Of a DNA stretch of 64,000 nt, positions 6,831 to 34,813 are shown piece by piece. The stretch covers positions 157,096-221,095 of the IMG/VR virus record IMGVR_UViG_3300045999_010033; one strand, given 5' to 3'. The first letter of the stretch is position 1. Each line of letters starts with the position of its first letter. The position numbers and the translations under genes were made by a program. A model generated the notes under the pieces. That model made no database searches. It was given only the letters and a program-made list of their open reading frames with translations, and was not told the origin of the DNA.

Positions 6831-6890
6831 TTAGGTATATACCTTTAGTTAGTAATAGAATATGCTATATAGCACTTACTAACATAAATA

Positions 6891-7175: not shown

Positions 7176-7176
7176 T

Positions 7177-12609: not shown

Positions 12610-12628
12610 TTTGTTTTGTTTTGTTTTA

Positions 12629-16982: not shown

Positions 16983-17573
16983 TTAGTTCAATTCAACAAT
17001 TATTTCACGCATTAGGTCTTGTGCTTTACACCACTTACCACATTCGTCTGCAATTTTCTGCCATTGCTTACTCTCATTCATTGGTGCCATAAATGCTCCA
17101 TGCGTAGACGGGTTCGATACGAAGTCCCAGCCAACCAATTCGAAGTCGTCTTGCACCATTACCGTGCCATCCCTTTGCTCATTAACTGAACCAAGTCCAC
17201 GTGAACTAATACCAAGACGTATATTATTTTTAAGCAATTCTTTTAAGATATTGCCCGATGGTGTTGAAAGAATTTCTACCACTCCACAAACATCATCCCC
17301 TTCCCACCATATTTCACGAATATTGTGTGATACATTTTTAAGCTCGATTACTGGAGAATCCGGATGGTCTAATTCACCAAGTGCACGTCTTTCCTTAATC
17401 AATTGCTTATATTTTTCACACTCACGCTCTAATATCTCTTTTGGATAACGGCGATTGTTTTGATTGGGTGCACCTGCTCTTTGCAAAACGCCTTTAACAA
17501 GAAAAGTACCATTAGATTCTTCTTTGAGTTTTGCTTCGAATAGGTGGGTTTCTATTAATAGTTTTTTATTCAT
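16983..17573 (-). CDS. Prohead maturation protease (T4 gp21-like)
   Basis: NNRRYP, ALGELDHP, NVSH, LGISSRGLGS, DFVSNPST motifs. Confidence 0.93.
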   Translation of the reverse strand: MNKKLLIETHLFEAKLKEESNGTFLVKGVLQRAGAPNQNNRRYPKEILERECEKYKQLIKERRALGELDHPDSPVIELKNVSHNIREIWWEGDDVCGVVEILSTPSGNILKELLKNNIRLGISSRGLGSVNEQRDGTVMVQDDFELVGWDFVSNPSTHGAFMAPMNESKQWQKIADECGKWCKAQDLMREIIVELN

Positions 17574-19087: not shown

Positions 19088-20836
19088 TTATTTAACAGCA
19101 GATTTGGTATCTGTTAGTATTATTTTTTTACCACCAAGCATATCTTTGTATATTTCTTTATAACTTACTTTACGTGGTTTGTATTTTACAGAACCTTCTT
19201 TTTGTTTTAGAGTTTTAATCCCAAGTGGGTCGCGACCAAGTGGATGATCATCTTTACCATATCTAACCGGGTCTTTTGGTCTTCCAACTTTTCCTTCTTC
19301 TTCTAATTCATCTTTAATTTTTTGAATTTCTTCTTCAACATTGGTTGGTTCTTCTGTTCCGGTTTCTTTAGCAGGATCAGTTCCTTGTGTTTCAATTTGT
19401 GTCAATCTGAACGCTTGCTTTGTATCTTCCAATACATCAATTGTCATGTCATCTTGTTCATCTTGCGCAAATTTCATAATATTTTCATACATCCACTTTT
19501 TAGAAAACAATTTTGTTTGTTGCATAGATTGTATAAGAGATACCTTTGATGTATATAATTCTATTTGCTCTTGCTCATATATTTTTGATGGAATAGTAAG
19601 TTCTAATTGAAAATCCAAATCTGCCGCGTTATCCATACCCTGCGCATATAAATGAACTATTGCTATCTTTGTCAATTCGGAAATAAGAACTTTTTGTATT
19701 CTTTCGATGGTTTTGGCGAACCTTACATCTTGCGCTGCCAATGTTGCTTTTCCGTTTACATCTTCTTCATATCCCAAATGTGATTTTGGAATTTTAAGAG
19801 CTGCGAACATTTTTCCTTTTAGGTAGTTGATATCATCTATTGCCTGATATTCCATGCCCTTCAAAGTATCTATGCTCGTACCACTATCGCTACCGCGGAC
19901 AGGAAGATAATAATCCTCAATAATATTTTGAATATTATATTTAAGATTGTAATCTCCGGTTTTTTCATCTACAAATGGTGTTTTTTTACTGCTGTTAATG
20001 ATTCGTTGCATATAATTATCAACTTCAGTTGGTGGTATATTACCAACATCAACTTTGAATATACGTTTTTCGGGAGCACGCATAATACGATGTATTAACA
20101 TAGCATCCTCCATAAGAGTTAGTTGTTTCCAAACCCGTCTTGCACCTTCTATCATTGATTTTCCATAAGGAAGAAAATTAGAATCAGAATGCATTCTGAA
20201 ATGCGCAATTTCATAATTTTCATATTCTTTTTTATTAGAAGCAGAAGACCCTCCGTATGGGTTTGTGTATGGTGCATATACAAACTTTACACGTTGTGGA
20301 TTTTCTATATCAAAGTTTTCAACACGTGTAACTTCATATACCGATATGGGAATTACATTAACAATTCCAAGTTCAGGTGCTACTTCTAATTGTAAAAAGA
20401 AATCACCATACTTTACCAAGTTTCTTGTCCAAGGCCAAAGTGTGAATTCTATGTTTACAATATCATAAAATAAGTTATGAAGAATTTGTTTTACATTTTC
20501 ATCTGAACAATGTATTTTCAGTACATCTCCATGTTCATTTTTTGTTGTACTTTCATCTGCGTAAATATCTAATGCCGCAGCAAGAATAGGGTCATGATCC
20601 ATTGAATCATAATCTCTAAATAGGTCAGCACGAACTTGCTGATACGACATTGCCGATTCCAACATTCCACCACTATATTGTGGGGTCTTCAATTTCATAA
20701 AACGGTCTACAAGGTTAGTCGTCATTGATTGATATTCATCAGTATCAATGACCCTTACGCCCTTTTTAGTTCTACGAATAATTGTGTTTGTAGAAAATAG
20801 TTTTTGTAACCTTCCAAAAATGGTTTTATCTGCCAT
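19088..20836 (-). CDS. Portal protein (T4 gp20-like)
   Basis: QLTLMEDAMLIHRIMRAPEKRIFKVDVGNIP, EDYYLPVRG..GTSIDTLKG, ALKIPKS. Confidence 0.93.
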   Translation of the reverse strand: MADKTIFGRLQKLFSTNTIIRRTKKGVRVIDTDEYQSMTTNLVDRFMKLKTPQYSGGMLESAMSYQQVRADLFRDYDSMDHDPILAAALDIYADESTTKNEHGDVLKIHCSDENVKQILHNLFYDIVNIEFTLWPWTRNLVKYGDFFLQLEVAPELGIVNVIPISVYEVTRVENFDIENPQRVKFVYAPYTNPYGGSSASNKKEYENYEIAHFRMHSDSNFLPYGKSMIEGARRVWKQLTLMEDAMLIHRIMRAPEKRIFKVDVGNIPPTEVDNYMQRIINSSKKTPFVDEKTGDYNLKYNIQNIIEDYYLPVRGSDSGTSIDTLKGMEYQAIDDINYLKGKMFAALKIPKSHLGYEEDVNGKATLAAQDVRFAKTIERIQKVLISELTKIAIVHLYAQGMDNAADLDFQLELTIPSKIYEQEQIELYTSKVSLIQSMQQTKLFSKKWMYENIMKFAQDEQDDMTIDVLEDTKQAFRLTQIETQGTDPAKETGTEEPTNVEEEIQKIKDELEEEGKVGRPKDPVRYGKDDHPLGRDPLGIKTLKQKEGSVKYKPRKVSYKEIYKDMLGGKKIILTDTKSAVK

Positions 20837-21976: not shown

Positions 21977-22618
21977 TTAGTTTACGGATTTAGATTTAGT
22001 ATCACGACCCGCCTGTCGGGCTTTTCTACCTGCACAGTGTGCTTTTTGGCTGAATCCTTTGGGGTTATCGCAATCAATTGATTTTTTGTAGCCTTTTGTC
22101 CATTTTTCATTTAGTCGGTTTTCGTGCTTTATGATTAACTCACCCAATACTTCTATTAGTCCGACCAATCTTTGAAACCCGATTTGGTCCATTTGAACTT
22201 TACCACCACATATTTCTTCCATATAACCATTAAATTCTTCACGAGCATCTTCTAAATTAAAACCGCCTTCGGCTGCTTTTTTATAGTGTGGAAGTTTTAC
22301 AACAAAATGATGATAGGTAAGAATTGCTACTCCACCCTTTTCTTTTGCATCTTTAGTTATTTTAGTAGCACCTTCTAATCTTTTCTTTGCAAAATCTTCA
22401 AAACTTTCTATTTTTGGAGAGTTTGATTTAACTAGATTTGCGGAAGTTTTTTTCTTTTCATCACCATAGGATTTACCCATAGCCTGCCCAGCGGTAGTTT
22501 CTCTTCCAGCTATCGTCACTTTTGTAGATGGACGTATATCATGCTGCTTTGCATAAGCATCAAATTCGGCTTGAGATTTAAATTCTAATTCGTTCAATAT
22601 ATCTTTAAGTCTAATCAT
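21977..22618 (-). CDS. Putative internal head protein (MIRLKDILNE leader; C-terminal LNE|KWTKGYKKSIDCDNPKGFSQKAHC module)
   Basis: Start reassigned to ATG 22618. Confidence 0.65.
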   Translation of the reverse strand: MIRLKDILNELEFKSQAEFDAYAKQHDIRPSTKVTIAGRETTAGQAMGKSYGDEKKKTSANLVKSNSPKIESFEDFAKKRLEGATKITKDAKEKGGVAILTYHHFVVKLPHYKKAAEGGFNLEDAREEFNGYMEEICGGKVQMDQIGFQRLVGLIEVLGELIIKHENRLNEKWTKGYKKSIDCDNPKGFSQKAHCAGRKARQAGRDTKSKSVN

Positions 22619-22619
22619 T

Positions 22620-22859
22620 TTATTTAATGGCTTTACCAAACTCTTGTGAAAAGTCCGTATCTTGTGATAAATCAATTGTTTGAACTCGGCACTTTTTACA
22701 TTCGTGTTTTTGTGTAAGTATTTCTATTACTTGTTTAGCTTCACTCATTGATTTAGCTTTTGTAAAAAGTATTTGTTCATCCTTTTTGCCAGGAGGAACA
22801 CCCCAAATAATATATTCAGTTTTAGTGGTTTCTTTTAATATATCTTTAAGTCTAATCAT
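22620..22859 (-). CDS. Putative internal head protein (MIRLKDILKE leader)
   Basis: First 23 nt identical to those of the 22618 gene. Confidence 0.65.
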   Translation of the reverse strand: MIRLKDILKETTKTEYIIWGVPPGKKDEQILFTKAKSMSEAKQVIEILTQKHECKKCRVQTIDLSQDTDFSQEFGKAIK

Positions 22860-23200
22860 GTCGGCGGATTATATTTTTTATCACTTCCCTTTTTATCCCA
22901 ACTAACTCTTACTGGCTTTTTACCTTTACTGCCATCACCTTTATCGCCACGTCCTGCTTTGTTTTGTTTTGCACGTTTACGTCTTACGAAACTTGCTCTA
23001 CCTTTTTTTCCAAGCTTTTTTGCCGCTGCCGATGAAAGACATGCCGCATATGCTTCACCTTCTTCGCCGGCTCCACACTTTCCAACACGTTTACCACTGG
23101 AATCATATCTATCCCAGCCACCACCTCCTTTACCTCCCCATTTGCCCTTTCCGAACCACTTACGGAGGTCTTCGTCTAAAAGGTCAAATAGTTTAATCAT
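22856..23200 (-). CDS. Basic Gly/Lys-rich putative internal head protein (MIKLFDLLDE leader)
   Basis: DLRKWFGKG...KCG...ACL...FVRRKR; very basic after the leader. Confidence 0.65.
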   Translation of the reverse strand: MIKLFDLLDEDLRKWFGKGKWGGKGGGGWDRYDSSGKRVGKCGAGEEGEAYAACLSSAAAKKLGKKGRASFVRRKRAKQNKAGRGDKGDGSKGKKPVRVSWDKKGSDKKYNPPT

Positions 23201-23523
23201 TAGAATACGGAATTGATTTGAGATGAAACCTCTTTACCATACTTTGATTGACATTGTTTCATCAATTCATTATAGATATTTGTTCTCAAATCTATAAGCT
23301 CTTTTGGAGTATGTCCAAACTCTTTCTGCATATCCAACATACTATTCAAAATGTTTTCAAATGCTCCCATTTTCATAAATTTGGCGAACTCAAGTACCGC
23401 TTCGGTATGCGCATTTCTATCGGTTAATTTTTCTATCTTTTTAACGATAGGGTCTACATTGATCGCTTCTTTTAATCCGGTAACTACCTTTGTTTCTGAT
23501 AGTATATTAGTTAGTTTAATCAT
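23200..23523 (-). CDS. Putative internal head protein (MIKLTNILSE leader)
   Basis: Leader plus a second LKE|A site; first gene after an ATATTTATA motif. Confidence 0.65.
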   Translation of the reverse strand: MIKLTNILSETKVVTGLKEAINVDPIVKKIEKLTDRNAHTEAVLEFAKFMKMGAFENILNSMLDMQKEFGHTPKELIDLRTNIYNELMKQCQSKYGKEVSSQINSVF

Positions 23524-23562: not shown

Positions 23563-25167
23563 TTATCCTAATAACCATCTTATATCTTCAATCTCTCCGT
23601 TATTTCCATAAGAAATTTCATATGGGTTATTTTGTAAGTGGTTTTTAGTATAAACACTTTCGTATTGTTGTATTTTAGCCGAACTTAACATAGACTTTGT
23701 AAGGTCTACTCCTTCATTTCTAAGCCTCAATGCAGTATTTCTAACCCACAGTCCTATCGCCATAGCCATTGTCAAGTCATCGTTGTAGCCCTTCATTGCT
23801 TCCGCTCTACCATTAAACCAAATAAATGTAAATAATTCTTCTATCATACGAGAAGACCGTATTAATATCTCTTTTTCTCTAAGATACGTATCTAATGCAG
23901 AAATAATAAGTGGTCGCGTCCTTTGTGTTACCGAAAATCCAGCAACCATCTTGCGTTCCTCACGATAATATTTGTTGGTCATTTGCCTTTCTACATCAAT
24001 GTATTTCAAGTCATTACTCATGTAAAATAGATTACCATATCCACGATTAATGATTTGTTGTATGGCGGCCCAACCTACGTTTGAGTTTTCCACAACTAAT
24101 AGGGCATTATTGTATTCGGTAGCAAGTGAAACTAATAGGTTTCCAAAATCTTTTGTATTGATTTTACCACGATATTCTGCAACTTGTGAGCAATTATCTA
24201 AATCTATAACTTGTGCAGTTGAAAAGTCATTTGAATCACCACGTGAAACGTCCGCAGCAACCATATAGTTTCTTGTATAATCCGGATGTTCCCATCTCCA
24301 TAGGTTTCCATCGAAACCAGTTTTTTCAATTGGATCGATTACCCAAGTTTGCTTATACCACATTAGAAGTTGTGGGTCTATCACAGTATCACCGGAACTT
24401 ACAAAATCACAATCACACTCTTGCGCAGCTCCTTTTACACCAAGAACACGTGTTTGATCATCTCTCCACGTTTGATTTCTTTCAGGGTGCTCTGTCCAAT
24501 GAAGCATTATATTATTGAATCCATTTATTCCACTTTCTCCATCTACCCACATTTTATGAAACCAATTACCAACACCATTTGGAGTTGATAGTACAATAGC
24601 AGAACCACCAGTTGAAAGTGTAGATTGCGCCGATAGCCAAATTTCATCAATATCTCTAATGAACGCTGCCTCATCAATTACAAGCAATGATAGGGCTTCA
24701 GAACGTCCTGCATCAGGAGATGATGTGATTGCTTTAACTTGCGAACCATTTTTTAGTTTAAGAGATAATTTATTATCTTCAACTGATGCGGATGAGCCAT
24801 CTCTCAACCAAATTGGCAAAAGATCGTGCATCACTCTTACTTTTTCTACAAGGTTTTTTGCAACTGTTACTTTTGTAGCAATAACAAGTGCGTTAAAATC
24901 CGCATTGAATATCATTTTCCATAAAATAAATCCTGCGGATAACGTGGATAATCCAAGTTGTCTACTCTTTAAAATTATATTATAACGATTATCTTTAAAA
25001 TCAGTAATACATTTTTCTTGAAATGGAAAAAGGTGAAATGGAATTTTACCACGAGTAGGGTGCTGAATGACACAATACTTTTTCATAAAGTATATTGGGT
25101 CTAATGCACATTTTTTATACTCATCGGCAATTAGGTCTTTCAGGCTTCTATTTGGATTTATTGGCAT
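23563..25167 (-). CDS. terL: Terminase large subunit (T4 gp17-like)
   Basis: LFPFQ Q-motif, KSRQLGLST Walker A, LLVIDEAAF Walker B, LSTPNG, nuclease DVSRG..DFS and DDLTMA. Confidence 0.95.
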   Translation of the reverse strand: MPINPNRSLKDLIADEYKKCALDPIYFMKKYCVIQHPTRGKIPFHLFPFQEKCITDFKDNRYNIILKSRQLGLSTLSAGFILWKMIFNADFNALVIATKVTVAKNLVEKVRVMHDLLPIWLRDGSSASVEDNKLSLKLKNGSQVKAITSSPDAGRSEALSLLVIDEAAFIRDIDEIWLSAQSTLSTGGSAIVLSTPNGVGNWFHKMWVDGESGINGFNNIMLHWTEHPERNQTWRDDQTRVLGVKGAAQECDCDFVSSGDTVIDPQLLMWYKQTWVIDPIEKTGFDGNLWRWEHPDYTRNYMVAADVSRGDSNDFSTAQVIDLDNCSQVAEYRGKINTKDFGNLLVSLATEYNNALLVVENSNVGWAAIQQIINRGYGNLFYMSNDLKYIDVERQMTNKYYREERKMVAGFSVTQRTRPLIISALDTYLREKEILIRSSRMIEELFTFIWFNGRAEAMKGYNDDLTMAMAIGLWVRNTALRLRNEGVDLTKSMLSSAKIQQYESVYTKNHLQNNPYEISYGNNGEIEDIRWLLG

Positions 25168-26504: not shown

Positions 26505-29500
26505 TTATTCATAAAATATTCCTAAAAGCTGATTTAATGGAGCGAATGTGCCTGTAAGTTTATAAGTCTTTCCGTTATAAACAAATACAATACCTTCTGC
26601 TGCTACTATTTTATCTACCCCACCCAATGAGTTTAATCTTTCTAATTCGTTTTTGAATTTTTTAATTATAGATGTGTCTCCGGTTTGTTTTACTTTTTGT
26701 GCAACTGAATCCAATTTCGTTTTCATAGCACGAATGGCAGTATCGGGGTGCACAGTTATTACTGATGTTACAAATTGTAAAACTTCAGAACCTACTCCCA
26801 AAAATATTTCTTCAAACGGTTTTATATTATCACGTTGTTGTTTTGGAACATTTATCTTATCGTGCTCTATTGTCCAATTTTGCAATGTTTTATCTGATAT
26901 TGTATTTAACCTAAAAGATTTTTCTCCAAATCCCCATCTGCGGATTAGTGCTTCTTTTGTAAGTTTATCGGGCTTAACGGGTGATTGCTTATCTATAAAA
27001 TCTGCCCACCATGCGTAGTGATAATCCGAAACGGAAGCAGAATCAGAAAGTCCAAATTTAGATTGTAGTTTGTTTAATTTTCCAAACCAATATCCTTGCT
27101 TCGATGAAAGCTCTTTACTTTTTGGAAGTTCTAAAACCGGAGGACCTGCTATCGTATATTTGGATTGCACATTTGCGTTGATTTGTTTTATCATGCCTGC
27201 CAATACTCTTGCGCTAGATTGGTCGGCGCTTATTGCCTTACCCGCATCATCATAACACACCGTTCCATGAAATACTAATAATGCCTGTCCGTATGGTATT
27301 ACGTTTACTGATTCTGGCCATATAACTTCAAGATTCATAAAACATTTCCCATTATTAAATATCTTTTCTTTTTGTTTTTCTGAAAGCCCACCTATTGCGG
27401 CGTTAAGGTCTTTCATTGCAAAATTATACGCATCGGTTAATCCACCACGACCTGCAAATTTAGATGCTACATCTTCTATACCCATTGCGTTTGCTCCTGC
27501 ATTTGCAAGATGTCCTTTGTTACGTGCGGCAATCAATCTTCCATTCTTCCAACTTATTGCCAAAGCCTGTCCGTCGGTTTTTTCACGAGCCAATTCCAAA
27601 CGACCACTTAGTGCGCCAGATATAATACGTTTAAGGTCACCAAACGTAAGCCCCATATCATCAAATGGATGTGACATGTGTCCATACGCACCACCTTCTT
27701 GTAATAGAGAAACTATACGATGCTCATATCCTCTTTCACGAATTACATCAACCGGTCTAATTGCCTTTGGTTTTACATATACATCTGGATAAGAGTATGG
27801 GTTTGGTCTTGAATTAAATGGATACATTTCCCATTTATCTGCTTTATCTTTTGCATATGCATCTCCTTTAGATGGATGAATTGTACGTTTAGCAGGTCCG
27901 TTTTCCTCTCTTGGATTATTAACCGGTATATTTTTTGCTGCCTTTTTAGCATCACGTTTTGAACTATATTCTAATACATCATATCCTACTATTTCAGCGT
28001 GCTTTTTTCCATATTTATCGTGCTTTTCCCAATCAGGAGAATATGGAGATCTGAAACTTTCCCCATTACTTGTCCCATCTACTACGGCTTCATTTACAAA
28101 ATTCTTTTTATTGAATTTAGTTGGTTTAAAATCAGTACGTGGTAAGTTCTTAACACGCCAAATTACATATGGTTGGTCTTGCTCATCATCACCGAATATA
28201 GTATCCGCAGTTGGGAAATCAATTTGAATATATCCGCCATTAGTAAACCACTCATCGGATTTATTTATACCATCATTGTTACCCAATTTTCTTTTATATC
28301 CTTTTGGTAAAAACATACCATCGGGTTGGTCATCATTAAATGCACCCTGAATACTTGTTGCTTCGTTTATAATTCCCTCTTGGAATATCTTTTTATTAAT
28401 CTTACCATATTCACGCATTAGTATTCCGGCCACCGCATGGGCTTTATTTTCAACAGAAGAGCCAGTCTTACCATCCTCTGCCCTATCTTTAATAATGCCC
28501 ATTTCATCTTGCTTACGATGTACCATTTCATGCGCAATCGTTCTTAAAATATCGGCAGTTAGGCGACCTTCGGTTGAAACGAATATTTCTTTTGTATTAT
28601 CATCGTATCCACCAAGAGATGTTTGTGATTCTGCGAACTCACCACCACCTACTAAATTGATTTTAGGTCTTTCATTTAGTTTCAATCGCTTTGTAGCATA
28701 TTCAACGAAATGATTTATTGATTCGGTTTTACTATCCAATGCATCTTCGGTTTCTCCGGTTTCGGGATTGTGATGTGAAAACGTTTTGTGCCAAATTTTA
28801 GATTTTTCTATTGCCCTTGCAGGATTAAGTTTATCTATTTTTTGTTGTGGTGATAATCTTCTATTAAACATTCCGGTAGCAGGAACATAATGTTCTTCAT
28901 TCAATAAATCTGCTGCGTTTCTTTTTGGTTCTTCTTTTTTATAACTTTTTATAGATTGTAATAATTGCGCATCGGTTAATTTGTATGTTTCTACACGTTT
29001 AATAACTTTTTCTAAAAAGTTTATTATAAATTTATTGTTACCATCTTGGGTTGATGAAATTTCGAACAAACCCATTGTTGCAGTAGATAGTGCCGCACCA
29101 CCACCCGCTGCTTGCGCACCACCAAATCCCAATGTTTCAAGTGCAGCATGCTTCACAATATCTTTTCCCAAATGAATACCAAACCCACCAAATCCATGTG
29201 TAAAAACACCAACTGAACCTTGTGCTGCTGCACTTGCAACTCCTAACGCACCTTGACCAGCGCTAACCGCTTTGGCCGCCGCTACACCTGCGCCACCTAA
29301 CATCATAGACCCCATTAACAATCCAACATCAATTGCAAAATGTTTGACATGATGTAATTGTTCTTTTCGTTTTTCATCGGAATAATCCCACTTTCCGGTT
29401 TGCTTATTTTTTACAGAACCAATCTTTTGTCCATTAGCCAATGCTTTAACTGCATCAACAGTTCCACCAATCATTTCTTTTTTGTGATGCGCCCACTTTT

Positions 29501-30800
29501 TTATTCCTTTACCAAAACCTTTAATGGCAGATTTTAATCTGGTCATCATTCCTTTTCTCTCCGGTGATTGTGGATTATTTATTTGTTCTATTGTTTTAGT
29601 TTCTTCATCAGATAACTTACTTTTTTCCGAATCCAATTGAGTTTTAATTTCTTCTTTTTCTTTTTCTGATTCCGGCTTTTCGGCATTTGTTTTAAAATCA
29701 GAACCTGATAGTTTATTAGGGTCTTCAGTTGGCTCTTCTGCTCCTGTCGTTTTTGGCTCTGAATCACTTGTGGGCTTTTCTGAAGCCGGTTTCTTTTCTT
29801 GATTGGTAGAGGCAGATGGTTCTTCTTTTGATGATGTCTTTTTATCTTTGCCAGTAAGCTTTTCTGCCTCTACGTGAGCTGGATGATCTTTGGCTAATCT
29901 AAGAGCTGCTCTTACTTTTATTTTTTTCTTTTCTCCTGCGGCGTTTGTATATTCAATTTCTTTATCCATTATAGGATTTTCCGATTCTGCCTCACCTAAA
30001 TAATTTGAAATAAAATCATTAAATATATCTTCGGCGGCAGCTCTTTCTATAATTGAAAAAATTGGATTGTATAATTCTGTCTCATCAATTGTTCTAAATG
30101 TAGTTGCCTGCTTTCCGTTTATGGTTGGCATTCCATGAGAATCTGATGATATATCTTTTACTTTCACCTTTTTGTTTTTGAATTTACCCATAAGAACGTT
30201 ATCTCCGACATCAACTCCTACTTTAATATTTTCACCGATTAATCGTTTTCTAATTAGGTCAAAAATACCTTTATCAAATTTTGAATATACTTTTTTAAAG
30301 TATTCTATGGCAGTTTTTTCATCTGCGCCACCAATATTTTTTCTTACATCAGTTCCACTAATTGCTTCTGCTTGTGGCGGCACTAAATACGTGTATCCAA
30401 TTTCTTTATAACCATAGCCCGCTTTACCACGATATGGTTTAAAATATGAACCACCTAATCTTTCTGCATCTTTTTCTCCAACTGCTGCAACGTATTGTGT
30501 AGTATCGGCATCAAACTTACTTAATATTTCAACTGGATTGTATGGATTTTTAACCATAACAAATCTATTAGCTGGAATATCAAACATTGTAGTTGCTATC
30601 TTTTTCTTTTCTTTAAAGTTAAAAGGAGATTTAGGTTGGGAAGTCGTATTTGAAGACCCAATGAAAACGTTACCAGCACCAAACTTACTAACTAAATTTT
30701 TATATGCTGCATAATGCCCTTTGTGGAATGGTTGAAATCTACCACTATATACTACTATTGTTTTTTTTACTTTTGGTTTATCTACTTCTGTTATATTCAT
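26505..30800 (-). CDS. 1,431-aa multidomain protein: HIGH-motif nucleotidyltransferase, hydrophobic Gly-rich segment, HExxH metallopeptidase-like and ligase-like (EKxDG) domains
   Basis: SGRFQPFHKGH and ISGTDVRK; ILRTIAHEMVH (28518-28532); REKTDGQ (27570-27584), MNLEVI, EGIVF. Confidence 0.75.
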   Translation of the reverse strand: MNITEVDKPKVKKTIVVYSGRFQPFHKGHYAAYKNLVSKFGAGNVFIGSSNTTSQPKSPFNFKEKKKIATTMFDIPANRFVMVKNPYNPVEILSKFDADTTQYVAAVGEKDAERLGGSYFKPYRGKAGYGYKEIGYTYLVPPQAEAISGTDVRKNIGGADEKTAIEYFKKVYSKFDKGIFDLIRKRLIGENIKVGVDVGDNVLMGKFKNKKVKVKDISSDSHGMPTINGKQATTFRTIDETELYNPIFSIIERAAAEDIFNDFISNYLGEAESENPIMDKEIEYTNAAGEKKKIKVRAALRLAKDHPAHVEAEKLTGKDKKTSSKEEPSASTNQEKKPASEKPTSDSEPKTTGAEEPTEDPNKLSGSDFKTNAEKPESEKEKEEIKTQLDSEKSKLSDEETKTIEQINNPQSPERKGMMTRLKSAIKGFGKGIKKWAHHKKEMIGGTVDAVKALANGQKIGSVKNKQTGKWDYSDEKRKEQLHHVKHFAIDVGLLMGSMMLGGAGVAAAKAVSAGQGALGVASAAAQGSVGVFTHGFGGFGIHLGKDIVKHAALETLGFGGAQAAGGGAALSTATMGLFEISSTQDGNNKFIINFLEKVIKRVETYKLTDAQLLQSIKSYKKEEPKRNAADLLNEEHYVPATGMFNRRLSPQQKIDKLNPARAIEKSKIWHKTFSHHNPETGETEDALDSKTESINHFVEYATKRLKLNERPKINLVGGGEFAESQTSLGGYDDNTKEIFVSTEGRLTADILRTIAHEMVHRKQDEMGIIKDRAEDGKTGSSVENKAHAVAGILMREYGKINKKIFQEGIINEATSIQGAFNDDQPDGMFLPKGYKRKLGNNDGINKSDEWFTNGGYIQIDFPTADTIFGDDEQDQPYVIWRVKNLPRTDFKPTKFNKKNFVNEAVVDGTSNGESFRSPYSPDWEKHDKYGKKHAEIVGYDVLEYSSKRDAKKAAKNIPVNNPREENGPAKRTIHPSKGDAYAKDKADKWEMYPFNSRPNPYSYPDVYVKPKAIRPVDVIRERGYEHRIVSLLQEGGAYGHMSHPFDDMGLTFGDLKRIISGALSGRLELAREKTDGQALAISWKNGRLIAARNKGHLANAGANAMGIEDVASKFAGRGGLTDAYNFAMKDLNAAIGGLSEKQKEKIFNNGKCFMNLEVIWPESVNVIPYGQALLVFHGTVCYDDAGKAISADQSSARVLAGMIKQINANVQSKYTIAGPPVLELPKSKELSSKQGYWFGKLNKLQSKFGLSDSASVSDYHYAWWADFIDKQSPVKPDKLTKEALIRRWGFGEKSFRLNTISDKTLQNWTIEHDKINVPKQQRDNIKPFEEIFLGVGSEVLQFVTSVITVHPDTAIRAMKTKLDSVAQKVKQTGDTSIIKKFKNELERLNSLGGVDKIVAAEGIVFVYNGKTYKLTGTFAPLNQLLGIFYE

Positions 30801-30871
30801 ATTAATAAATATCTTTTTTTATTGAAATATTATTATTACTATTTTTTTAATCGAACATACGAAATTTTTTT

Positions 30872-33800
30872 CTAATTACCAATTTTATTTTGTAACTCTT
30901 CTACTTTTTGAGTAAGTTCTTGTACAGCTTTCCATAAAACAAATACTAAATCGGATGTACTAATATTATCTATCTTTCCATCCATTACACCAACAAATTC
31001 TGGTAAGCCAATATCATGTAGTTCTTCGGCTATAATACCAATCATTTTCGCATCTCCATCGGATTGAGATTTAAAATTATATTCACGTATAGGTAATTCG
31101 TTAACCATAGATAATACAGATTTATCCCAATTTTTAATATTTTTTTTATATTTTTTACTAGATGTTCTCCTAACAATGTATCCAGTATCTGCTCCATTTT
31201 GAACCCATTGTACATCAACAAATGGATTCACTCCCGGTGATGAAACATCGGATGTTCTTAACATATTAGGTAAAAACAATGTTGGTCTAGTACTTTTGTG
31301 AGTTAATATTCCGATGTTTGCAGTTCCCCATGATATTGTGTTATCAACTGCAATTGATGAATAATTTGCTACTGCTCCTGCCGGCAAAATTATTTTTCCA
31401 TCGTTTAATCTTATATTTCCTTTTTGTATTACTAATGCATCTTTATTGGCATCATCAACCGTGTGTATAACCTTCCCGGCAATTCTAGCTGATACCAAAT
31501 CAGAACCGTCAGTATCATCTCTTTTTATTCTGAAATATTTGTTTTCATTTTTCAACATCTGAAACCCATCATTTGTTAATTCTATTAAATCAATTTCAGA
31601 TGTTGCAGTAAAATTGGCGTTATCCCAAATTGTTGAATTTATGTTTATACTCGGCTCTTGTGTTGTATTATTATTAGACCAAAAAGGACCGGATATAGTA
31701 TAAAAAGTATATAATGTATACACGTTATTCGGTGGGGTCGCAGTTGGAAAAGTTAATAATACATTTGAAGCAAATGTATTATCTATGGATACTACTTGGT
31801 TTGATCCAGATACAGTTACACCATTTCCAAATAGAGTAAAAATTGGTATATCGGCCGAATCTCTTATTTGAATTCCCCTATCAAAGCTTACATATCCTTC
31901 AAACGTATCGTTTGTTTCTATTAAAGGATTGCCAATGGAATCCCATCCAATTGTTAAATAGTAAGTTAGAGCACCATTGGGATTAATTGTTATCGTATCA
32001 TACGTTGGTGAATAATTAAAAGTACCATCAAAATAGTCAGTACCGGTCTTAGTTTCACCTTGTATTGTTATAGCAGGTGTACTTCCACTAATTGTATTAG
32101 TATTCGCAGATATAGATGATAACTCGCCATAACGTATATCTACACGCTTTTTAGAATTTTCATCAAATAATCCAATTGAAGGTATTTTGGGATTTAATAC
32201 AATTTTACTAGAACTATCTCTCAAAGAATCCCTATCGATAATCCATCCAGCAATTCTACCATCAGTTGCTACAACACTTCCGGATATTGTTAAATTTGCT
32301 CCATCCCAAAGAAGTGCGTTACTACCATTACGAATTGACATCTTTGGACTACCACTATCGAATCCTAAAAATATTCCATCGGTATTGTACGCAGAAGCGC
32401 TTATTTTTATACTTGGATTTTTACGTGTAGGATGATCGGAATCTAAAGCAATGACAGGAGTTCCACCTTTTGCACCTATATTAATTGTTCGGTTTGCATA
32501 AACATCTTGAGCAAAAAGAATATCAGTTGCTACCGAATCAAATTGTGCACTAAAATTATCCCAACTAGCAGACCATTGAGAGCCAACACTATTTCCCGTA
32601 TTATCATCGGATGGACGTGTACCAATTGTTGATGTATGACTTACTGCGCATAAATAATATCTATCAATCAAACTTGAGCCATTCCAATATTTTCCCAATA
32701 CAACATCACGTCGGGTATCGGTTCTATAATAATCGGTACTTGCCGACCATTCACCCCTATACACTACTCCTGGTCCGGTTTGTCCTACTTTACCTTCATT
32801 GAGTCTAAAAACTGTAGCGTATCTCTCAATGCCATCGGCAGACGCAGTATATGTTATACTACCAACCTTATATCCAGTTAATGACCCCGAAAAACTTTGC
32901 GATGTTAATATATAAAGTCCATCGTTAATTTTATTTAAAGTACCGGGGTATGGTGTTAGATTTTTTGGTATAAGACTTCCGGTATCATCATATGCAGATG
33001 AATAAAATGTTATAGAGCCGGTAATAGCAATTGGCTTTACTATAAAATTTATAAGATTAGGAAACGCTAAAGTACCGGATGCGTTAAATGCAAATGAATT
33101 ATTTGTTAATGTTAATTCTATGTCCTTTCCTGCCACTATATCATTACCACCTACAAATGTAAATGATTGCCTTAAATCTATTGGAACAAAATTATTGTTT
33201 ATATCGTAAAATTCAAACTTAAATTCAAACTTTTCGTTTGATATTTTATTTGGAACATTTACATTTAGTGTAACTTCGTTTGGAGAAAATGATGTTTCGG
33301 AAGCTGTAGATAATGATACATCTGTCAATTGCCAAACACCTGATTTAACTACAAAGAAAAGCCTACCACCACCAGTTTTATCTGCTTTAAAATTAATTTG
33401 TTGCTTATCAAATCTCCTAAAATTGGTGGGGGTTGTTATTGTAGTTAAACGCTTTCCATATCCAAAGTTAATATCGGTATCTACAAAAGAAGACCCGGTC
33501 ATATACACTTCTAAATTTCCGTAGTTTGCAACGGATGATGATAGTAATGGTGTAAAATCTAATTGATATTCAGTGCCCTCTGTAAAATTAATTGATTCGG
33601 ATGTAGCAAAATAAATCAATCCATTTGTGGTATTACTATCAGTTTGTGGAATTAATTTTACTGATTTATTTAAATACGTATCATCTACTTGCCAATCCGA
33701 TGGTGTGCTGATTGATCCAGTTATCCAAAACGCATCCAATATAGGGTCAGTAAATATTCCTTTTCTTACATTTAATGATGAAGAAAATGTTTCGGCAATT

Positions 33801-34813
33801 AATAAATCCGCACTCTCCAATTGAACATCTTCTAACAACTCAAAATCACCAAGCCAGTTTTGACTTTTGGCAAATACCTTTACACGATGCACATCACCGG
33901 TAAATGTATTCAAATCAGTTATTTTGATACGTGCAAAAGAACTATCAATATTTGAATCAAATACTAATGATGTATTTTCATATGAAGCAGTAAATGATGC
34001 AGATATAAAGTTTTTTACCTCTTGGTAATATGGACTAGTAGAACTTGTTTCATAATAAGGTATATTTACAACCGCAAGTTTGGATGTGTAAATATCCGAT
34101 AATGTAGGAGAAAAGGATTGGGGGAGTCCATCTACTTGTATTTGCAATCCTTCCATAGATTGAGAAAAAATTGTATCATCATTTATTCTCAATTGGTAAT
34201 TTACTGCACCATTGAAAGTTCTATAATCATCTCCTGGCGCAGGATTTATTGCGTATCCATCTATACTACTACTTACTGTTACTATTAATGGACTCCTATT
34301 ATATATTGGAAGTATTTGTTCTGTAATTTCAAACTTCGGAGTTTTATAAAATCTTATTTTAGTAGTGTTACGAAGATTTGGATTTACTTCAATTACCTTT
34401 TGCCACTTTACGTTATATGAATCTTTCCAAATATCCGGCACCGGTGTTATAGACCCATTTTGATCTACATAATCACTTAATTCTCCCAATATCGTTATGG
34501 TACACGGACCAAAGGCAGTATCGGGATAAATATGGACCGATACCACCTTTGATACACCATCGTATGGCTCTGGATTTCCTTTGGCAGGTTCATAGTAAAT
34601 GGTTTCACCTGCCGAATCCTTTATTTCTAGTTTTACTTCAGTACCGTTAACTAAAAATTCAGAACCTTGTATAAGGAATGCGTTTTTACCACCGGTAAAT
34701 GTATCCGGCAATTCAGTAACTCTAAAATATTTTGAGTTTGCATCCGTATCTAAAACCAGTGTGTTTACTCTATCTAAATTCTGTTTAAATAGTGTCTTTT
34801 TTAATATAGCCAT
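30872..34813 (-). CDS. Tail fibre/spike protein with C-terminal intramolecular chaperone (peptidase S74-like)
   Basis: TSSKKYKKNIK..YNFK..IGIIAEEL..LWKAVQELTQKVEEL at the C-terminus; YRGEWSAS..Y carbohydrate-binding-like motif. Confidence 0.75.
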   Translation of the reverse strand: MAILKKTLFKQNLDRVNTLVLDTDANSKYFRVTELPDTFTGGKNAFLIQGSEFLVNGTEVKLEIKDSAGETIYYEPAKGNPEPYDGVSKVVSVHIYPDTAFGPCTITILGELSDYVDQNGSITPVPDIWKDSYNVKWQKVIEVNPNLRNTTKIRFYKTPKFEITEQILPIYNRSPLIVTVSSSIDGYAINPAPGDDYRTFNGAVNYQLRINDDTIFSQSMEGLQIQVDGLPQSFSPTLSDIYTSKLAVVNIPYYETSSTSPYYQEVKNFISASFTASYENTSLVFDSNIDSSFARIKITDLNTFTGDVHRVKVFAKSQNWLGDFELLEDVQLESADLLIAETFSSSLNVRKGIFTDPILDAFWITGSISTPSDWQVDDTYLNKSVKLIPQTDSNTTNGLIYFATSESINFTEGTEYQLDFTPLLSSSVANYGNLEVYMTGSSFVDTDINFGYGKRLTTITTPTNFRRFDKQQINFKADKTGGGRLFFVVKSGVWQLTDVSLSTASETSFSPNEVTLNVNVPNKISNEKFEFKFEFYDINNNFVPIDLRQSFTFVGGNDIVAGKDIELTLTNNSFAFNASGTLAFPNLINFIVKPIAITGSITFYSSAYDDTGSLIPKNLTPYPGTLNKINDGLYILTSQSFSGSLTGYKVGSITYTASADGIERYATVFRLNEGKVGQTGPGVVYRGEWSASTDYYRTDTRRDVVLGKYWNGSSLIDRYYLCAVSHTSTIGTRPSDDNTGNSVGSQWSASWDNFSAQFDSVATDILFAQDVYANRTINIGAKGGTPVIALDSDHPTRKNPSIKISASAYNTDGIFLGFDSGSPKMSIRNGSNALLWDGANLTISGSVVATDGRIAGWIIDRDSLRDSSSKIVLNPKIPSIGLFDENSKKRVDIRYGELSSISANTNTISGSTPAITIQGETKTGTDYFDGTFNYSPTYDTITINPNGALTYYLTIGWDSIGNPLIETNDTFEGYVSFDRGIQIRDSADIPIFTLFGNGVTVSGSNQVVSIDNTFASNVLLTFPTATPPNNVYTLYTFYTISGPFWSNNNTTQEPSININSTIWDNANFTATSEIDLIELTNDGFQMLKNENKYFRIKRDDTDGSDLVSARIAGKVIHTVDDANKDALVIQKGNIRLNDGKIILPAGAVANYSSIAVDNTISWGTANIGILTHKSTRPTLFLPNMLRTSDVSSPGVNPFVDVQWVQNGADTGYIVRRTSSKKYKKNIKNWDKSVLSMVNELPIREYNFKSQSDGDAKMIGIIAEELHDIGLPEFVGVMDGKIDNISTSDLVFVLWKAVQELTQKVEELQNKIGN

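What the first reader, a model, noticed from the sequence alone, without database searches (positions are those of the whole stretch)
26505..30800. 1,431-aa multi-enzyme polyprotein: nucleotidyltransferase + membrane segment + metallopeptidase + ligase-like domain
Seen: a HIGH-type motif (FQPFHKGH, ISGTDVRK), a Gly/Ala-rich hydrophobic stretch (about 29062-29340), HEMVH, and a C-terminal domain with EKTDG (motif I of ATP-dependent ligase/capping nucleotidyltransferases). Domain boundaries coincide with ITE|V, IGE|N, IDE|T, LGE|A, LFE|I, LNE|E, INE|A, VNE|A and LQE|G. The gene has the late-type motif 4 nt before its ATG. Inference: a late-made, packaged, protease-processed enzyme cassette delivered at infection. 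Plausible roles are NAD/nucleotide cofactor handling and RNA or DNA end repair as counter-defence, but substrates cannot be read from sequence.
Basis: partly seen in the sequence, partly recalled or inferred. Interest (0 to 1): 0.75.

Follow-up and report, generated by a model that had tools for sequence, protein, structure and literature searches.

The report
Phage multi-enzyme protein, novel RNA-ligase domain
A giant T4-like phage from lake water encodes one 1,431-residue protein that joins an NAD-synthesis-type nucleotidyltransferase, a miniature zinc protease and a previously unrecognised RNA-ligase-like enzyme; it is probably a repair and counter-defence kit that is cut into pieces and may travel inside the virus head.

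Summary
The 1,431-aa ORF (26505-30800, minus strand) is real and is intact in four independent lake metagenomes.

- **N-terminus:** residues 10-187 are a HIGH-superfamily nucleotidyltransferase (Pfam PF01467 above threshold, nearest to NadM-type NMNAT).
- **Metallopeptidase:** residues 692-812 fold as a minimal zincin metallopeptidase.
- **C-terminus:** residues 1031-1431 fold (pLDDT 93.5) as a ligase/capping nucleotidyltransferase closest to RNA ligases. Motifs I-V are invariant and a roughly 170-residue helical insert splits the fold. No Pfam model covers it.
- **'Membrane segment':** only a borderline-hydrophobic Gly/Ala-rich stretch.

The ligase-like domain defines a large phage family (at least 1,837 clusters) and was C-terminal in every family member listed. 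It is repeatedly coupled to the HIGH enzyme: fused in both orders, or as a neighbour. In a syntenic relative it is a separate gene behind CCA-adding-type, kinase and HD genes, which is an RNA-repair cassette.

Packaging and processing are not shown. Supporting them: a gp21-type prohead protease, five family-conserved hxE sites at module borders, a capsid-targeting-like leader on free-standing relatives, and published virion detection of cyanophage cytidylyltransferases.

The parts
26505..30800 (-). Whole ORF, 1,431 aa plus stop
   Evidence: Intact with 0 indels in four independent lake-water runs. Same architecture in at least 109 full-length relatives.
30804..30812 (-). Upstream motif ATATTTATT, ending 4 nt before the ATG (putative late-type promoter element)
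   Evidence: ATATTTAT is 16x enriched upstream of genes and found before 29 genes. Promoter function is not shown.
30240..30773 (-). HIGH-superfamily nucleotidyltransferase domain (res 10-187), NadM/NMNAT-like. HxGH at res 26-29, ISGTDVR at 147-153.
   Evidence: PF01467 25.3 bits against a cut-off of 21. phrog_395. TIGR00125 above its cut-off, while NadM equivalogs fall far below theirs. Best PDB matches are NMNATs 2qjt and 4yp5. Motifs invariant in alignment A4.
30081..30230 (-). Small beta-rich module (res 191-240), a shuffled cassette found at other positions in relatives
   Evidence: The same GKFKNKK...HGMPTINGK module follows the peptidase, or directly precedes the ligase domain, in relatives. 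Weak Cpn10/KOW/GroES hits only.
29841..30080 (-). Conserved small module (res 241-320) carrying the conserved LGE270 site
   Evidence: Family conservation profile. No family assignment.
29541..29840 (-). Low-complexity E/K/S/T/P linker (res 321-420)
   Evidence: Composition and low conservation.
29061..29540 (-). Lys-rich segment (res 421-487), then a Gly/Ala-rich hydrophobic region (res 488-580) ending in the conserved LFE580
   Evidence: 24% G and 21% A. Kyte-Doolittle maximum 1.58 at res 488-506. Conserved in the family. Membrane insertion is not established.
28365..28727 (-). Minimal zincin-like metallopeptidase (res 692-812). HEMVH at 757-761, third ligand probably E784 (GSxxEN).
   Evidence: H, E, H and the downstream E are invariant in alignment A2. 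AF2 model pLDDT 87.3. Foldseek hits are IrrE/PprI, minigluzincins, SPRTN, Wss1, CapP and ArdC. Pfam hits to zincin families are all sub-threshold.
27711..28364 (-). Variable modules (res 813-1030), largely specific to this phage's close relatives
   Evidence: Low occupancy in the family alignment. Pieces recur before the ligase domain in other proteins.
26508..27710 (-). RNA-ligase-like covalent nucleotidyltransferase domain (res 1031-1431). Motif I EKTDG has K1074 (27570-27584). Motifs IV/V EGIVF...YKLTG are at res 1402-1417 (26550-26597). The helical insert spans about res 1229-1397 (26610-27116).
   Evidence: AF2 pLDDT 93.5, pTM 0.88. The top 23 of 48,161 PDB chains are all ligase/capping enzymes, with RNA ligases at Z 7.4-8.8. 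Foldseek top hits are Trl1, T4 Rnl1, Rnl3 and Rnl2. hhalign against an Rnl1 profile gives P 4.8e-5 with motifs I, Ia, III and IIIa aligned. K44, D46, G47, R63, E128, E372, G373 and K384 are invariant.
27696..27704 (-). LQE1035, directly before the GGAYGHM start of the ligase domain: candidate cleavage site
   Evidence: [LIVMF]xE stands directly before this motif in 285 of 302 family members. The segment is disordered in the AF2 model, residues 1-9 with pLDDT below 50.
16983..17573 (-). T4 gp21-type prohead protease gene (candidate processing enzyme)
   Evidence: PF03420 102 bits, E 2.5e-30. Also present in Mel-JY01 and LR756508, which carry relatives of the protein.

Best explanation
The ORF is a modular 'polyvalent' protein of a 221-kb T4-like freshwater phage.

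**Shown**
- It has an N-terminal HIGH-superfamily nucleotidyltransferase nearest to NadM-type NMN adenylyltransferases.
- It has a central, minimal zincin metallopeptidase.
- It has a C-terminal domain with the fold and all catalytic motifs of ATP-dependent RNA ligases. K1074 in EKTDG is the predicted nucleotidylated lysine. The adenylyltransferase fold is interrupted by a helical insert.
- These modules are separated by linkers and shuffled cassettes.

**Inferred**
- The ligase domain seals broken RNA, most likely tRNA. In a syntenic relative the same domain is a separate gene directly behind a CCA-adding-type nucleotidyltransferase, a polynucleotide-kinase-type P-loop kinase and an HD phosphohydrolase.
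- The HIGH domain works in the same pathway. The two are fused in both orders and are neighbours elsewhere. Its most likely product is NAD+ or a related dinucleotide, made together with the phage's NadV.
- The protein is made with the late/structural genes and cut at conserved hydrophobic-x-Glu borders. The cut is made by the gp21-type prohead protease, by its own zincin domain, or by both.
- At least part of it is carried in the head and released into the next host. There it would act as pre-made counter-defence against RNA-cleaving and NAD-depleting immunity.

**Rough confidences:** domain identities 0.9; RNA-repair ligase role 0.6; functional coupling of the two nucleotidyltransferases 0.6; processing and packaging 0.4.
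For: **Domains**
- HIGH nucleotidyltransferase.
- Zincin peptidase.
- Ligase-like domain.

**Family size and position**
- 1,837 clusters at 50% identity, and the domain ends at the C-terminus in every hit listed.

**RNA-repair context**
- L096 gene order is SbcCD, a 1,448-aa protein, an 887-aa cytidylyltransferase (CTase) protein, PolyA_pol head (E 3e-30), AAA_33 kinase (E 2e-25), HD, the 414-aa ligase-like gene, TerL and portal. This is syntenic with the window.

**Coupling of the two enzymes**
- Mel-JY01 has a direct 639-aa fusion.
- In a motif scan, 155 of 306 sampled family members carry the HIGH motif.
- L099 has a free 182-aa CTase about 1.3 kb upstream of a free ligase-like gene.
- S-PM2d138 has the reverse order, ligase-like then CTase.

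**NAD link**
- NadV is present, and the only other PF01467 gene is a 141-aa protein that looks RfaE/TagD-like by eye.

**Processing and packaging**
- gp21-type protease.
- Five family-conserved hxE borders.
- 285 of 302 members have hxE directly before the ligase domain, in a segment that is disordered in the model.
- Free-standing ligases start with MIRLKKLLNE. That leader otherwise occurs only at the start of six ORFs in this genome, five of them in the head module.
- A module of the relative's polyprotein exists here as a leader-bearing free protein.
- T4 packages Alt and the internal proteins through short N-terminal propeptides that gp21 removes after Glu (PMC9026906).
- Cytidylyltransferases were detected in S-CREM2 virions (PMC10665884) and in S-SM1 virions with 25 counts (PMC3037559 Table S8).
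- The gene lies between a tail-fibre-like gene and TerL, behind the enriched upstream motif.
Against: - There is no proteomic, transcript or biochemical datum for this protein or any close relative.
- This protein's own N-terminus (MNITE) lacks the MIRLK leader.
- The virion-detected cyanophage enzymes share only 27% identity over 116 aa of the HIGH domain. The authors of that study themselves allow for contamination.
- In cyanophages the CTase and a free peptidase homologue sit among replication genes.
- No ligase Pfam model hits the domain even at E 10, and no PDB sequence does. The assignment therefore rests on fold and motifs.
- This genome has no kinase, HD or CCA-type gene next to the ORF, and it already has Rnl1 with a kinase plus an Rnl2-like gene elsewhere.
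- The motif ends 4 nt from the ATG, which leaves no room for a normal leader.
- The docking test of the two enzyme domains gave no answer.
Confidence: 0.5

Rival explanations
1. Same enzymes, but purely intracellular. The protein is made during infection and works in the infected cell as a multifunctional RNA-repair/NAD enzyme. It is neither packaged nor cut by the prohead protease. The conserved hxE triplets are structural or linker features, and the zincin domain acts on host proteins or only on the protein itself.
For: - RNA-repair enzymes of T4 are cytoplasmic (established knowledge).
- The L096 neighbours are ordinary soluble enzymes.
- The hxE count is at chance level.
- The cyanophage homologues lie in the replication module.
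- S-PM2 and Syn9 virion proteomes did not detect the cytidylyltransferase (PMC3037559 Table S8).
Against: - hxE stands directly before the ligase domain in 94% of members, within a segment predicted to be disordered.
- Free-standing ligases carry the same leader as five small ORFs of the head module.
- The gene sits in the late/structural block.
- Related enzymes were detected in virions of two cyanophages (PMC10665884; PMC3037559).
- The genome already has an Rnl1-plus-kinase pair and an Rnl2-like gene in the first quarter of the genome, so a third purely cytoplasmic ligase would be redundant.
Confidence: 0.33
2. The C-terminal domain is mainly a morphogenetic factor, like T4 gp63 (Rnl1), which also catalyses tail-fibre attachment. 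Its position next to the tail-fibre-like 1,313-aa gene would reflect that role.
For: - The neighbouring 1,313-aa protein has a tail-fibre-like C-terminus.
- In both syntenic relatives examined the ligase-like gene lies a few genes downstream of its 1,448-aa counterpart.
- T4 Rnl1 is among the structural matches.
- The dual role of gp63 is established knowledge.
Against: - All catalytic residues are invariant across 61 diverse members.
- The RNA-repair cassette in L096.
- The coupling to a HIGH nucleotidyltransferase has no link to fibre attachment.
- The genome has a separate Rnl1 orthologue.
Confidence: 0.07
3. The C-terminal domain is a DNA ligase, a DNA-end-modifying enzyme or an RNA-capping enzyme rather than an RNA-repair ligase. 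For example, it could seal or protect genome ends after injection.
For: - KTDG is also the motif I form of capping enzymes (own knowledge).
- DNA ligases and capping enzymes are in the fold hit list.
- One family member weakly hits the NAD-dependent DNA ligase adenylation model.
Against: - RNA ligases score Z 7.3-8.8, DNA ligases 5.2-6.9 and capping enzymes 4.2-4.8.
- There is no OB domain after motif V, because the protein ends there.
- The neighbours in L096 are RNA-end healing enzymes and a CCA-type enzyme.
- The genome has its own DNA ligase.
Confidence: 0.1

Closest known systems
ATP-dependent RNA ligases (T4 Rnl1, fungal Trl1 ligase domain, T4 Rnl2, TbREL1, Naegleria NgrRnl)
   Same: They share the adenylyltransferase fold (Z 7.4-8.8, about 180-197 aligned residues). 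They also share motif I KxDG, Ia, III, IIIa, IV and V in the same order. In a relative the domain sits with a kinase and a phosphoesterase, as in RNA repair systems.
   Different: No Pfam or PDB sequence match exists. A helical insert of about 170 residues lies between motifs IIIa and IV, and the protein ends right after motif V, so there is no C-terminal appended domain. An extra invariant GHxxHPFDD motif lies upstream of motif I. The cofactor and the substrate are unknown.
NadM-type NMN adenylyltransferase (archaeal/phage NMNAT; the NadV-NadM NAD+ salvage of phages)
   Same: It has the GRFQPFHxGH signature and the ISxTxxR motif. The best PDB and NCBIfam matches are NMNATs. NadV is present in the genome.
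   Different: Only the first 70 or so residues align, and the scores are far below the equivalog cut-offs (32 against 397 bits). There is no Nudix domain. The domain is embedded in a 1,431-aa protein. The substrate has not been tested.
Polyvalent proteins of phages and conjugative elements (Iyer et al. 2017, PMC5512222)
   Same: It is a large multi-enzyme polypeptide with an embedded minimal zincin peptidase as hub, and its modules are shuffled between relatives. It is proposed to be virion-borne and auto-processed.
   Different: The enzyme set differs: a find in that paper for 'ligase' and 'nucleotidyltransferase' (3 and 2 occurrences) showed no HIGH nucleotidyltransferase or ATP-dependent RNA ligase as a polyvalent-protein domain in the passages returned. 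Here a T4-type prohead protease with matching conserved sites offers a second processing route.
T4 Alt and internal proteins IPI-III (capsid-targeting sequence, gp21 cleavage, injection)
   Same: A gp21-type protease is present. hydrophobic-x-Glu sites lie at module borders. Free-standing relatives and five head-module ORFs share a 10-residue N-terminal leader ending in L-x-E, which matches the logic of the T4 capsid-targeting sequence (PMC9026906).
   Different: No experimental evidence of packaging or cleavage exists. This protein's own N-terminus is MNITE rather than the shared leader. The cargo would be repair and nucleotide enzymes rather than an ADP-ribosyltransferase.
Cyanophage 'cytitidyltransferase' genes (S-PM2d138; T4-GC190 of S-SM1; S-CREM2 ORF154; S-SRM01 gp258 with peptidase gp257)
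   Same: They have a HIGH nucleotidyltransferase of the same superfamily. S-PM2d138 also carries a ligase-like domain with the same insert architecture. S-SRM01 has a free homologue of the zincin domain next to its CTase. Virion detection has been reported (PMC10665884; PMC3037559).
   Different: The relationship is distant: 27% identity over 116 aa, and hhalign against a single sequence was negative. The domain order is reversed, and the genes lie in the replication module.

Membership tests
HIGH-superfamily nucleotidyltransferases (Pfam CTP_transf_like, PF01467) | Profile match above the curated cut-off | tested here: met
   25.3 bits against 21. TIGR00125 gives 28.9 against 27.7. 30.5 bits in the genome scan.
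HIGH-superfamily nucleotidyltransferases (Pfam CTP_transf_like, PF01467) | HxGH motif and the C-terminal ISxTxxR-type motif | tested here: met
   H26, G28, H29, S148, T150 and R153 are invariant in 31 relatives.
NadM-type NMN adenylyltransferase | Equivalog-level profile match over the whole domain | tested here: not met
   The best NCBIfam NadM models give 23-32 bits against cut-offs of 127-449, and only res 14-83 align.
NadM-type NMN adenylyltransferase | NMN + ATP -> NAD+ activity | not testable with these tools
   Indirect only: NadV is present and there is no other NMNAT candidate in the genome.
Covalent nucleotidyltransferases (ATP/NAD ligases and capping enzymes) | Motif I KxDG with the catalytic lysine, plus motifs Ia, III, IIIa, IV and V in order | tested here: met
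   K44, D46, G47, R63, E128, E372, G373 and K384 are invariant, and F147/H148 are at least 90% conserved, in 61 members. Motifs I, Ia, III and IIIa align with the Rnl1 profile.
Covalent nucleotidyltransferases (ATP/NAD ligases and capping enzymes) | Adenylyltransferase domain fold | tested here: met
   Model pLDDT 93.5. The top 23 of 48,161 chains all belong to this superfamily, with Z up to 8.8. The first 39 Foldseek PDB matches are all RNA or DNA ligases.
Covalent nucleotidyltransferases (ATP/NAD ligases and capping enzymes) | Formation of a lysyl-NMP intermediate | not testable with these tools
   Needs a labelled-nucleotide adduct assay with K1074A as control.
Rnl1 / Rnl2 / DNA ligase Pfam families (PF09511, PF09414, PF01068) | Profile match to the family model | tested here: not met
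   None of the three models hits the ORF at E <= 10, although each finds another gene of the genome. hhalign against an Rnl1 alignment gives probability 68% and P 4.8e-5.
Zincin-like metallopeptidases (gluzincin type) | HExxH plus a downstream Glu ligand on the next helix | tested here: met
   H66, E67, H70 and E93 of alignment A2 are invariant in 39 relatives.
Zincin-like metallopeptidases (gluzincin type) | Fold: N-terminal helix, three-stranded sheet and two C-terminal helices | tested here: met
   The model's secondary structure matches. Hits are IrrE/PprI, minigluzincins, SPRTN (TM 0.57, rmsd 3.3) and Wss1 (TM 0.59), with E-values no better than 5.6e-3.
Zincin-like metallopeptidases (gluzincin type) | Match to a curated peptidase family above its cut-off | tested here: not met
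   Only sub-threshold hits: DUF6782, DUF3920, M78, Tox-MPTase4 and eCIS_core.
Polyvalent proteins (Iyer et al. 2017) | Phage-encoded polypeptide combining several unrelated effector or enzyme domains with a zincin peptidase | tested here: met
   Three enzyme domains plus shuffled modules.
Polyvalent proteins (Iyer et al. 2017) | Carried in the virion and delivered with the DNA | not testable with these tools
   Only indirect evidence from distant cyanophage proteomes (PMC10665884; PMC3037559).
T4-type head-internal proteins processed by gp21 | gp21-type prohead protease encoded by the phage | tested here: met
   PF03420 E 2.5e-30 at window 16983-17573. Also present in two phages that carry relatives.
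T4-type head-internal proteins processed by gp21 | Conserved (L/I)-x-E sites at propeptide or module borders | tested here: inconclusive
   Five border sites are 77-99% conserved, four are not, and the total count is at chance level. 285 of 302 members have the site before the ligase domain.
T4-type head-internal proteins processed by gp21 | N-terminal capsid-targeting leader | tested here: inconclusive
   The shared MIRLK..L.E leader is on free-standing ligase relatives and six ORFs of this genome. This ORF starts MNITE instead, a form conserved as MNLxE in its family.
Integral membrane segment | Hydrophobic stretch of about 19 residues above the usual Kyte-Doolittle threshold of 1.6 | tested here: inconclusive
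   The maximum is 1.58 at res 488-506, and the rest of the Gly/Ala region is below 1.2.

The most novel reading that the evidence does not exclude
T4-like aquatic phages pack an RNA-repair and NAD kit into the capsid. This kit is an unrecognised RNA-ligase family with its coupled HIGH nucleotidyltransferase and, in relatives, kinase, HD and CCA-type enzymes. The enzymes enter either as leader-tagged single proteins or as one polyprotein that the prohead protease cuts at hxE borders, and the phage injects them with the DNA. Repair of cleaved tRNA and resupply of NAD+ would then begin before any phage gene is translated. A sharper variant holds that the ligase uses NAD+ as its AMP donor, and that the fused NMNAT-like domain recycles the released NMN. 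That would make it the first NAD+-dependent RNA ligase, with built-in cofactor regeneration.
Probability: 0.25. Interest if true: 0.85.

Novelty: new variant of a known kind. Interest (0 to 1): 0.62.

Why it matters
The C-terminal domain belongs to a very large, phage-only family with at least 1,837 clusters at 50% identity. No Pfam model covered any of 61 sampled members, and full-text searches for the nearest Pfam family (DUF6267) and for the one cultured phage carrying a close relative (Mel-JY01) found no paper. Recognising it as an RNA-ligase-type enzyme adds a new branch to the ligase superfamily, with an unusual inserted helical domain.

Its repeated coupling to an NMNAT-like enzyme, by fusion in both orders and as neighbours, points to an undescribed link between nucleotide-cofactor synthesis and RNA repair in phage counter-defence. 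tRNA-cleaving and NAD-depleting immune systems are currently central in phage-bacterium research.

If the packaging reading is right, the T4 'internal protein' route would be shown to deliver repair enzymes. That is a new class of injected cargo. It would also explain the cytidylyltransferases that keep turning up in cyanophage virion proteomes.

Tried and rejected
- **Sequence-level searches of the C-terminal domain found nothing informative.** This covers Pfam at E 10, NCBIfam, PDB by sequence and by profile, which gave only spurious eS6/GntR hits, and a Pfam scan of 61 members.
- **The Pfam DUF6267 lead from the ESM Atlas** gave no hit on this genome.
- **The PT-TG lead for the Gly/Ala region** (score 0.80) has no HMM support and was dropped.
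- **A Trl1-like pathway needing NAD+ for 2'-phosphate removal** was considered. No KptA/Tpt1 gene is present in the genome, so it is not favoured.
- **Docking of the HIGH and ligase domains** returned 'no answer' and is not used as evidence.
- **hhalign of the ligase profile against single sequences** of S-PM2d138 and S-SRM01 gp259 was negative. Homology to S-PM2d138 rests on the BFVD fold match and shared invariant residues.
- **RNA-seq evidence:** no served RNA run holds this DNA, so the transcription start and timing could not be tested.
- **Literature:** no paper was found for DUF6267 or Mel-JY01. The Burroughs and Aravind 2016 RNA-repair survey is not held.
- **Pfam and PHROGs scans of the six leader-bearing ORFs** found no hits.

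Full report
**1. The observation**

The ORF at 26505-30800 on the minus strand encodes 1,431 residues. The window is the last 64 kb of a 221,095-bp IMG/VR virus record that CheckV rates complete. Near-identical DNA occurs in lake and freshwater metagenomes. Contigs of four runs from four studies cover the ORF with no indels.

The Gly/Ala-rich stretch is at residues 488-580.

The neighbourhood is T4-like:
- major head protein at 10975-12678;
- gp21-type prohead protease at 16983-17573;
- portal at 19088-20836;
- large terminase at 23563-25167;
- a 1,313-aa protein with a tail-fibre-like C-terminus directly upstream;
- a fused SbcD-SbcC, then primase, then baseplate wedge.

**2. How common the protein is**

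At least 756 database proteins match the middle region. A motif scan of the first 60 hits shows the same order of HIGH motif, ISGT motif, HExxH, KxDG and terminal EG[IV]VF in nearly all of them, and 109 of the 120 listed hits passed the N- and C-terminal motif filters and were aligned.

A conservation profile splits the protein as follows:

| Residues | Character |
|---|---|
| 1-187 | conserved block |
| 191-240 | variable cassette |
| 241-320 | conserved block |
| 321-420 | low-complexity linker |
| 400-620 | conserved block containing the Gly/Ala region |
| 640-680 | private insert |
| 692-812 | conserved block |
| 813-1030 | poorly conserved modules |
| 1031-1431 | conserved block |

**3. 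N-terminal domain**

- Pfam CTP_transf_like passes its cut-off (25.3 against 21 bits).
- PHROG 395 'cytidyltransferase' matches.
- NCBIfam's domain-level model passes, while the NadM equivalogs match only residues 14-83 and fall far below their cut-offs.
- The best solved relatives are NadM-type NMNATs.
- HxGH and ISGTxxR are invariant.

This is therefore a HIGH-superfamily nucleotidyltransferase that resembles NMNAT. Membership in the NadM family is not established.

The genome encodes NadV. Its only other PF01467 gene is a 141-aa protein that looks RfaE/TagD-like by eye. That leaves this domain as the only candidate NMNAT partner.

**4. Central peptidase**

In 39 relatives the HExxH and a Glu 23 residues after the motif's last His (GSxxEN) are invariant. 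The AF2 model (pLDDT 87.3) has the helix, three strands and two helices of a minimal zincin.

Foldseek finds IrrE/PprI, ImmA-like regulators, minigluzincins, SPRTN, Wss1, CapP and ArdC. The E-values are weak and the probabilities high. Pfam gives only sub-threshold zincin families.

This matches the zincin 'hub' domain that Iyer et al. describe for polyvalent proteins (PMC5512222).

**5. C-terminal domain**

No Pfam, NCBIfam or PDB sequence match exists. An exhaustive search finds 1,837 clusters at 50% identity, and in every hit listed the domain ends the protein. The N-terminal extension ranges from 0 to about 1,500 residues.

In 61 diverse members, residues K44, D46, G47, R63, E128, E372, G373 and K384 are invariant. 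This is the motif I, Ia, III, IV, V pattern of covalent nucleotidyltransferases.

Profile-profile comparison with 71 Rnl1 relatives gave probability 68% and P 4.8e-5. It aligned EKTDG with EKMDG, GRG with TRGS, and the motif III/IIIa stretch.

The AF2 model is confident (pLDDT 93.5, pTM 0.88).
- In a Foldseek-independent scan of 48,161 PDB chains, the top 23 are all ligases or capping-fold proteins.
- RNA ligases lead: NgrRnl 8.8, TbREL1 8.7, Trl1 8.2, Rnl2 8.1 and Rnl1 7.4.
- DNA ligases score 5.2-6.9 and capping enzymes 4.2-4.8.
- Foldseek agrees.

About 180-197 residues align, from both ends of the model.

**6. What the ligase domain does**

The most informative evidence is context. In a 189-kb relative that is syntenic with the window, the gene order is:
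1. SbcCD;
2. a 1,448-aa protein;
3. an 887-aa cytidylyltransferase (CTase) protein (54% identical to this N-terminus);
4. PolyA_pol-head nucleotidyltransferase (CCA-adding type);
5. AAA_33 P-loop kinase;
6. HD phosphohydrolase;
7. a free 414-aa ligase-like gene;
8. TerL and portal.

Kinase, phosphoesterase, ligase and a 3'-end nucleotidyltransferase make up the classical RNA end-healing and sealing set. This argues for RNA repair, probably of tRNA.

In this phage the healing genes are absent at the locus. The genome holds a separate kinase-Rnl1 pair, an Rnl2-like gene and a DNA ligase in the first quarter of the genome (17-46 kb). This late-region ligase is therefore an additional one.

**7. 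Coupling of the two nucleotidyltransferases**

- Microcystis phage Mel-JY01 fuses them directly in 639 aa.
- 155 of 306 sampled family members carry the HIGH motif.
- A distant phage has a free CTase about 1.3 kb upstream of the free ligase gene, with a C92 peptidase between them.
- S-PM2d138 of a T4-like cyanophage has the reverse order, ligase-like then CTase. It has the same insert architecture and the same invariant His, Lys, Asp and Gly.
- S-SRM01 places a free homologue of the zincin domain beside its CTase.

Fusions in both orders are classic evidence for a shared pathway. The chemistry of that pathway is not known. An NAD+-using ligase with NMN recycling is an untested idea.

**8. Packaging and processing**

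These are inferred, not shown.

*Points in favour*
- The phage, Mel-JY01 and LR756508 all encode a gp21-type protease.
- T4 gp21 cuts after Glu in a short hydrophobic-x-Glu context and removes 7-65-residue propeptides. A 10-residue capsid-targeting sequence loads Alt and the internal proteins (PMC9026906).
- Family-conserved hxE sites lie at residues 5, 190, 270, 580 and 1035, each at a border between a conserved block and a variable linker.
- 285 of 302 family members have [LIVMF]xE directly before the ligase domain, in a segment that the model leaves disordered.
- Free-standing ligases begin MIRLKKLLNE-VLLKE|GG.
- In the six-frame translation of this genome, the pattern MI[RK]L..[IL]L.E occurs six times. 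About 0.03 would be expected by chance. It is always at an ORF start, and five of the six lie in the head module.
- One of those ORFs is 49% identical to the C-terminal module of the relative's CTase polyprotein. The same module therefore exists leader-tagged in one phage and inside a polyprotein in another.
- Cytidylyltransferases were found in S-CREM2 virions (PMC10665884) and in S-SM1 virions with 25 counts (PMC3037559 Table S8).

*Points against*
- The total [LI]xE count is at chance level: 12 against 12.7 +/- 3.3.
- This ORF starts MNITE rather than with the shared leader.
- The virion-detected enzymes are distant relatives, and S-PM2 and Syn9 proteomes missed them.

**9. Expression signal**

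On the coding strand, ATATTTAT(A) is the most enriched upstream 8-mer (16-fold). It precedes 29 genes, 19 of them in the 120-221 kb part that holds the structural genes identified in the window. Here it reads ATATTTATT and ends 4 nt before the ATG. That leaves no room for a normal leader. The transcript may be leaderless, or the gene may be co-transcribed with the 1,313-aa gene, whose copy of the motif lies 24 nt before its own ATG. No RNA run holds this DNA, so 'late' remains an inference.

**10. The 'membrane segment'**

The region is 45% Gly plus Ala and is conserved in the family. Its most hydrophobic 19-residue window scores 1.58, and no family model matches it. It may be a membrane-active or self-associating segment. 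A transmembrane helix is not established.

**11. Verdict**

- The domain interpretation is supported.
- The RNA-repair and NAD readings gain contextual support.
- The packaged, protease-processed cassette is plausible (about 0.4) but unproven.
- The protein is best filed as a new variant of the polyvalent-protein theme. It carries an unrecognised, very abundant RNA-ligase-like family that is coupled to a HIGH nucleotidyltransferase.

Noticed in passing
window 15172-15588, 21977-22618, 22620-22859, 22856-23200, 23200-23523 (all minus strand) and G000:C1:2217-3044: Six ORFs start with the same leader, MI[RK]L..[IL]L.E. It is the only place the pattern occurs in the six-frame translation, and five of the ORFs lie between the prohead protease, portal and terminase genes. 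None has a Pfam or PHROG hit. They look like T4-style internal head proteins that share a capsid-targeting sequence.
   Followed up: partly
whole genome; in the window before the genes at 9703-10890, 16679-16951, 18176-19048, 23200-23523, 30872-34813, 39638-40822, 42120-42743, 54199-54711 and 62533-62811: The upstream motif ATATTTAT(A) on the coding strand is 16-fold enriched before genes. TATTTATA is the reverse complement of the T4 late element TATAAATA, so it is not the T4 motif in the T4 orientation.
   Followed up: partly
window 34860-38003 (-): A single 1,047-aa ORF combines an SbcD-like nuclease (res 4-335) and an SbcC-like ATPase (res 298-1045). This is a fusion of the T4 gp47 and gp46 equivalents. 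The relative L096 has the same 1,054-aa fusion.
   Followed up: no
G000:C1:27285-28058, 29955-30494, 41312-41875, 44890-45450, 45675-45986: Outside the window, the first quarter of the genome carries NadV, an Rnl2-like ligase, an ATP-dependent DNA ligase, an Rnl1 ligase and an adjacent AAA_33 kinase. The phage therefore has four ligase-type enzymes in all.
   Followed up: partly
window 27654-27708: In three of four lake metagenomes, contigs break or branch exactly at the start of the ligase domain, with unlike sequence beyond the break. Co-occurring strains seem to share the ligase module behind different upstream modules, which suggests a recombination seam.
   Followed up: no
L106:1759-3534 (Synechococcus phage S-PM2, S-PM2d138): This 591-aa 'hypothetical protein' of a model cyanophage is a ligase-like domain (KWDG ... 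EGFV ... KIV) followed by a HIGH nucleotidyltransferase. That is the reverse order of the window's protein.
   Followed up: partly
L092:5932-6330 and 6563-7885 (Synechococcus phage S-SRM01 gp257, gp258): A free 132-aa homologue of the zincin domain lies directly upstream of the phage's cytidyltransferase gene, within the replication module.
   Followed up: no
L098:9458-12675: In one relative, the large terminase region is called as three genes (305, 396 and 345 aa). The first hits Terminase_6N and the middle one has a weak Intein_splicing hit, so the terminase may be interrupted by an intein.
   Followed up: no
window 42793-48135 (-) and 30872-34813 (-): Two very large neighbours are poorly explained. 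The 1,780-aa ORF has no PHROG hit at all. The 1,313-aa ORF matches only through a tail-fibre or minor-head-like C-terminal stretch of about 100 residues.
   Followed up: no
window 1-2000 and 4001-6000: Two stretches have 45-48% G+C against a background of about 33%, with strong negative GC skew. This could be foreign or RNA-gene-rich DNA.
   Followed up: no
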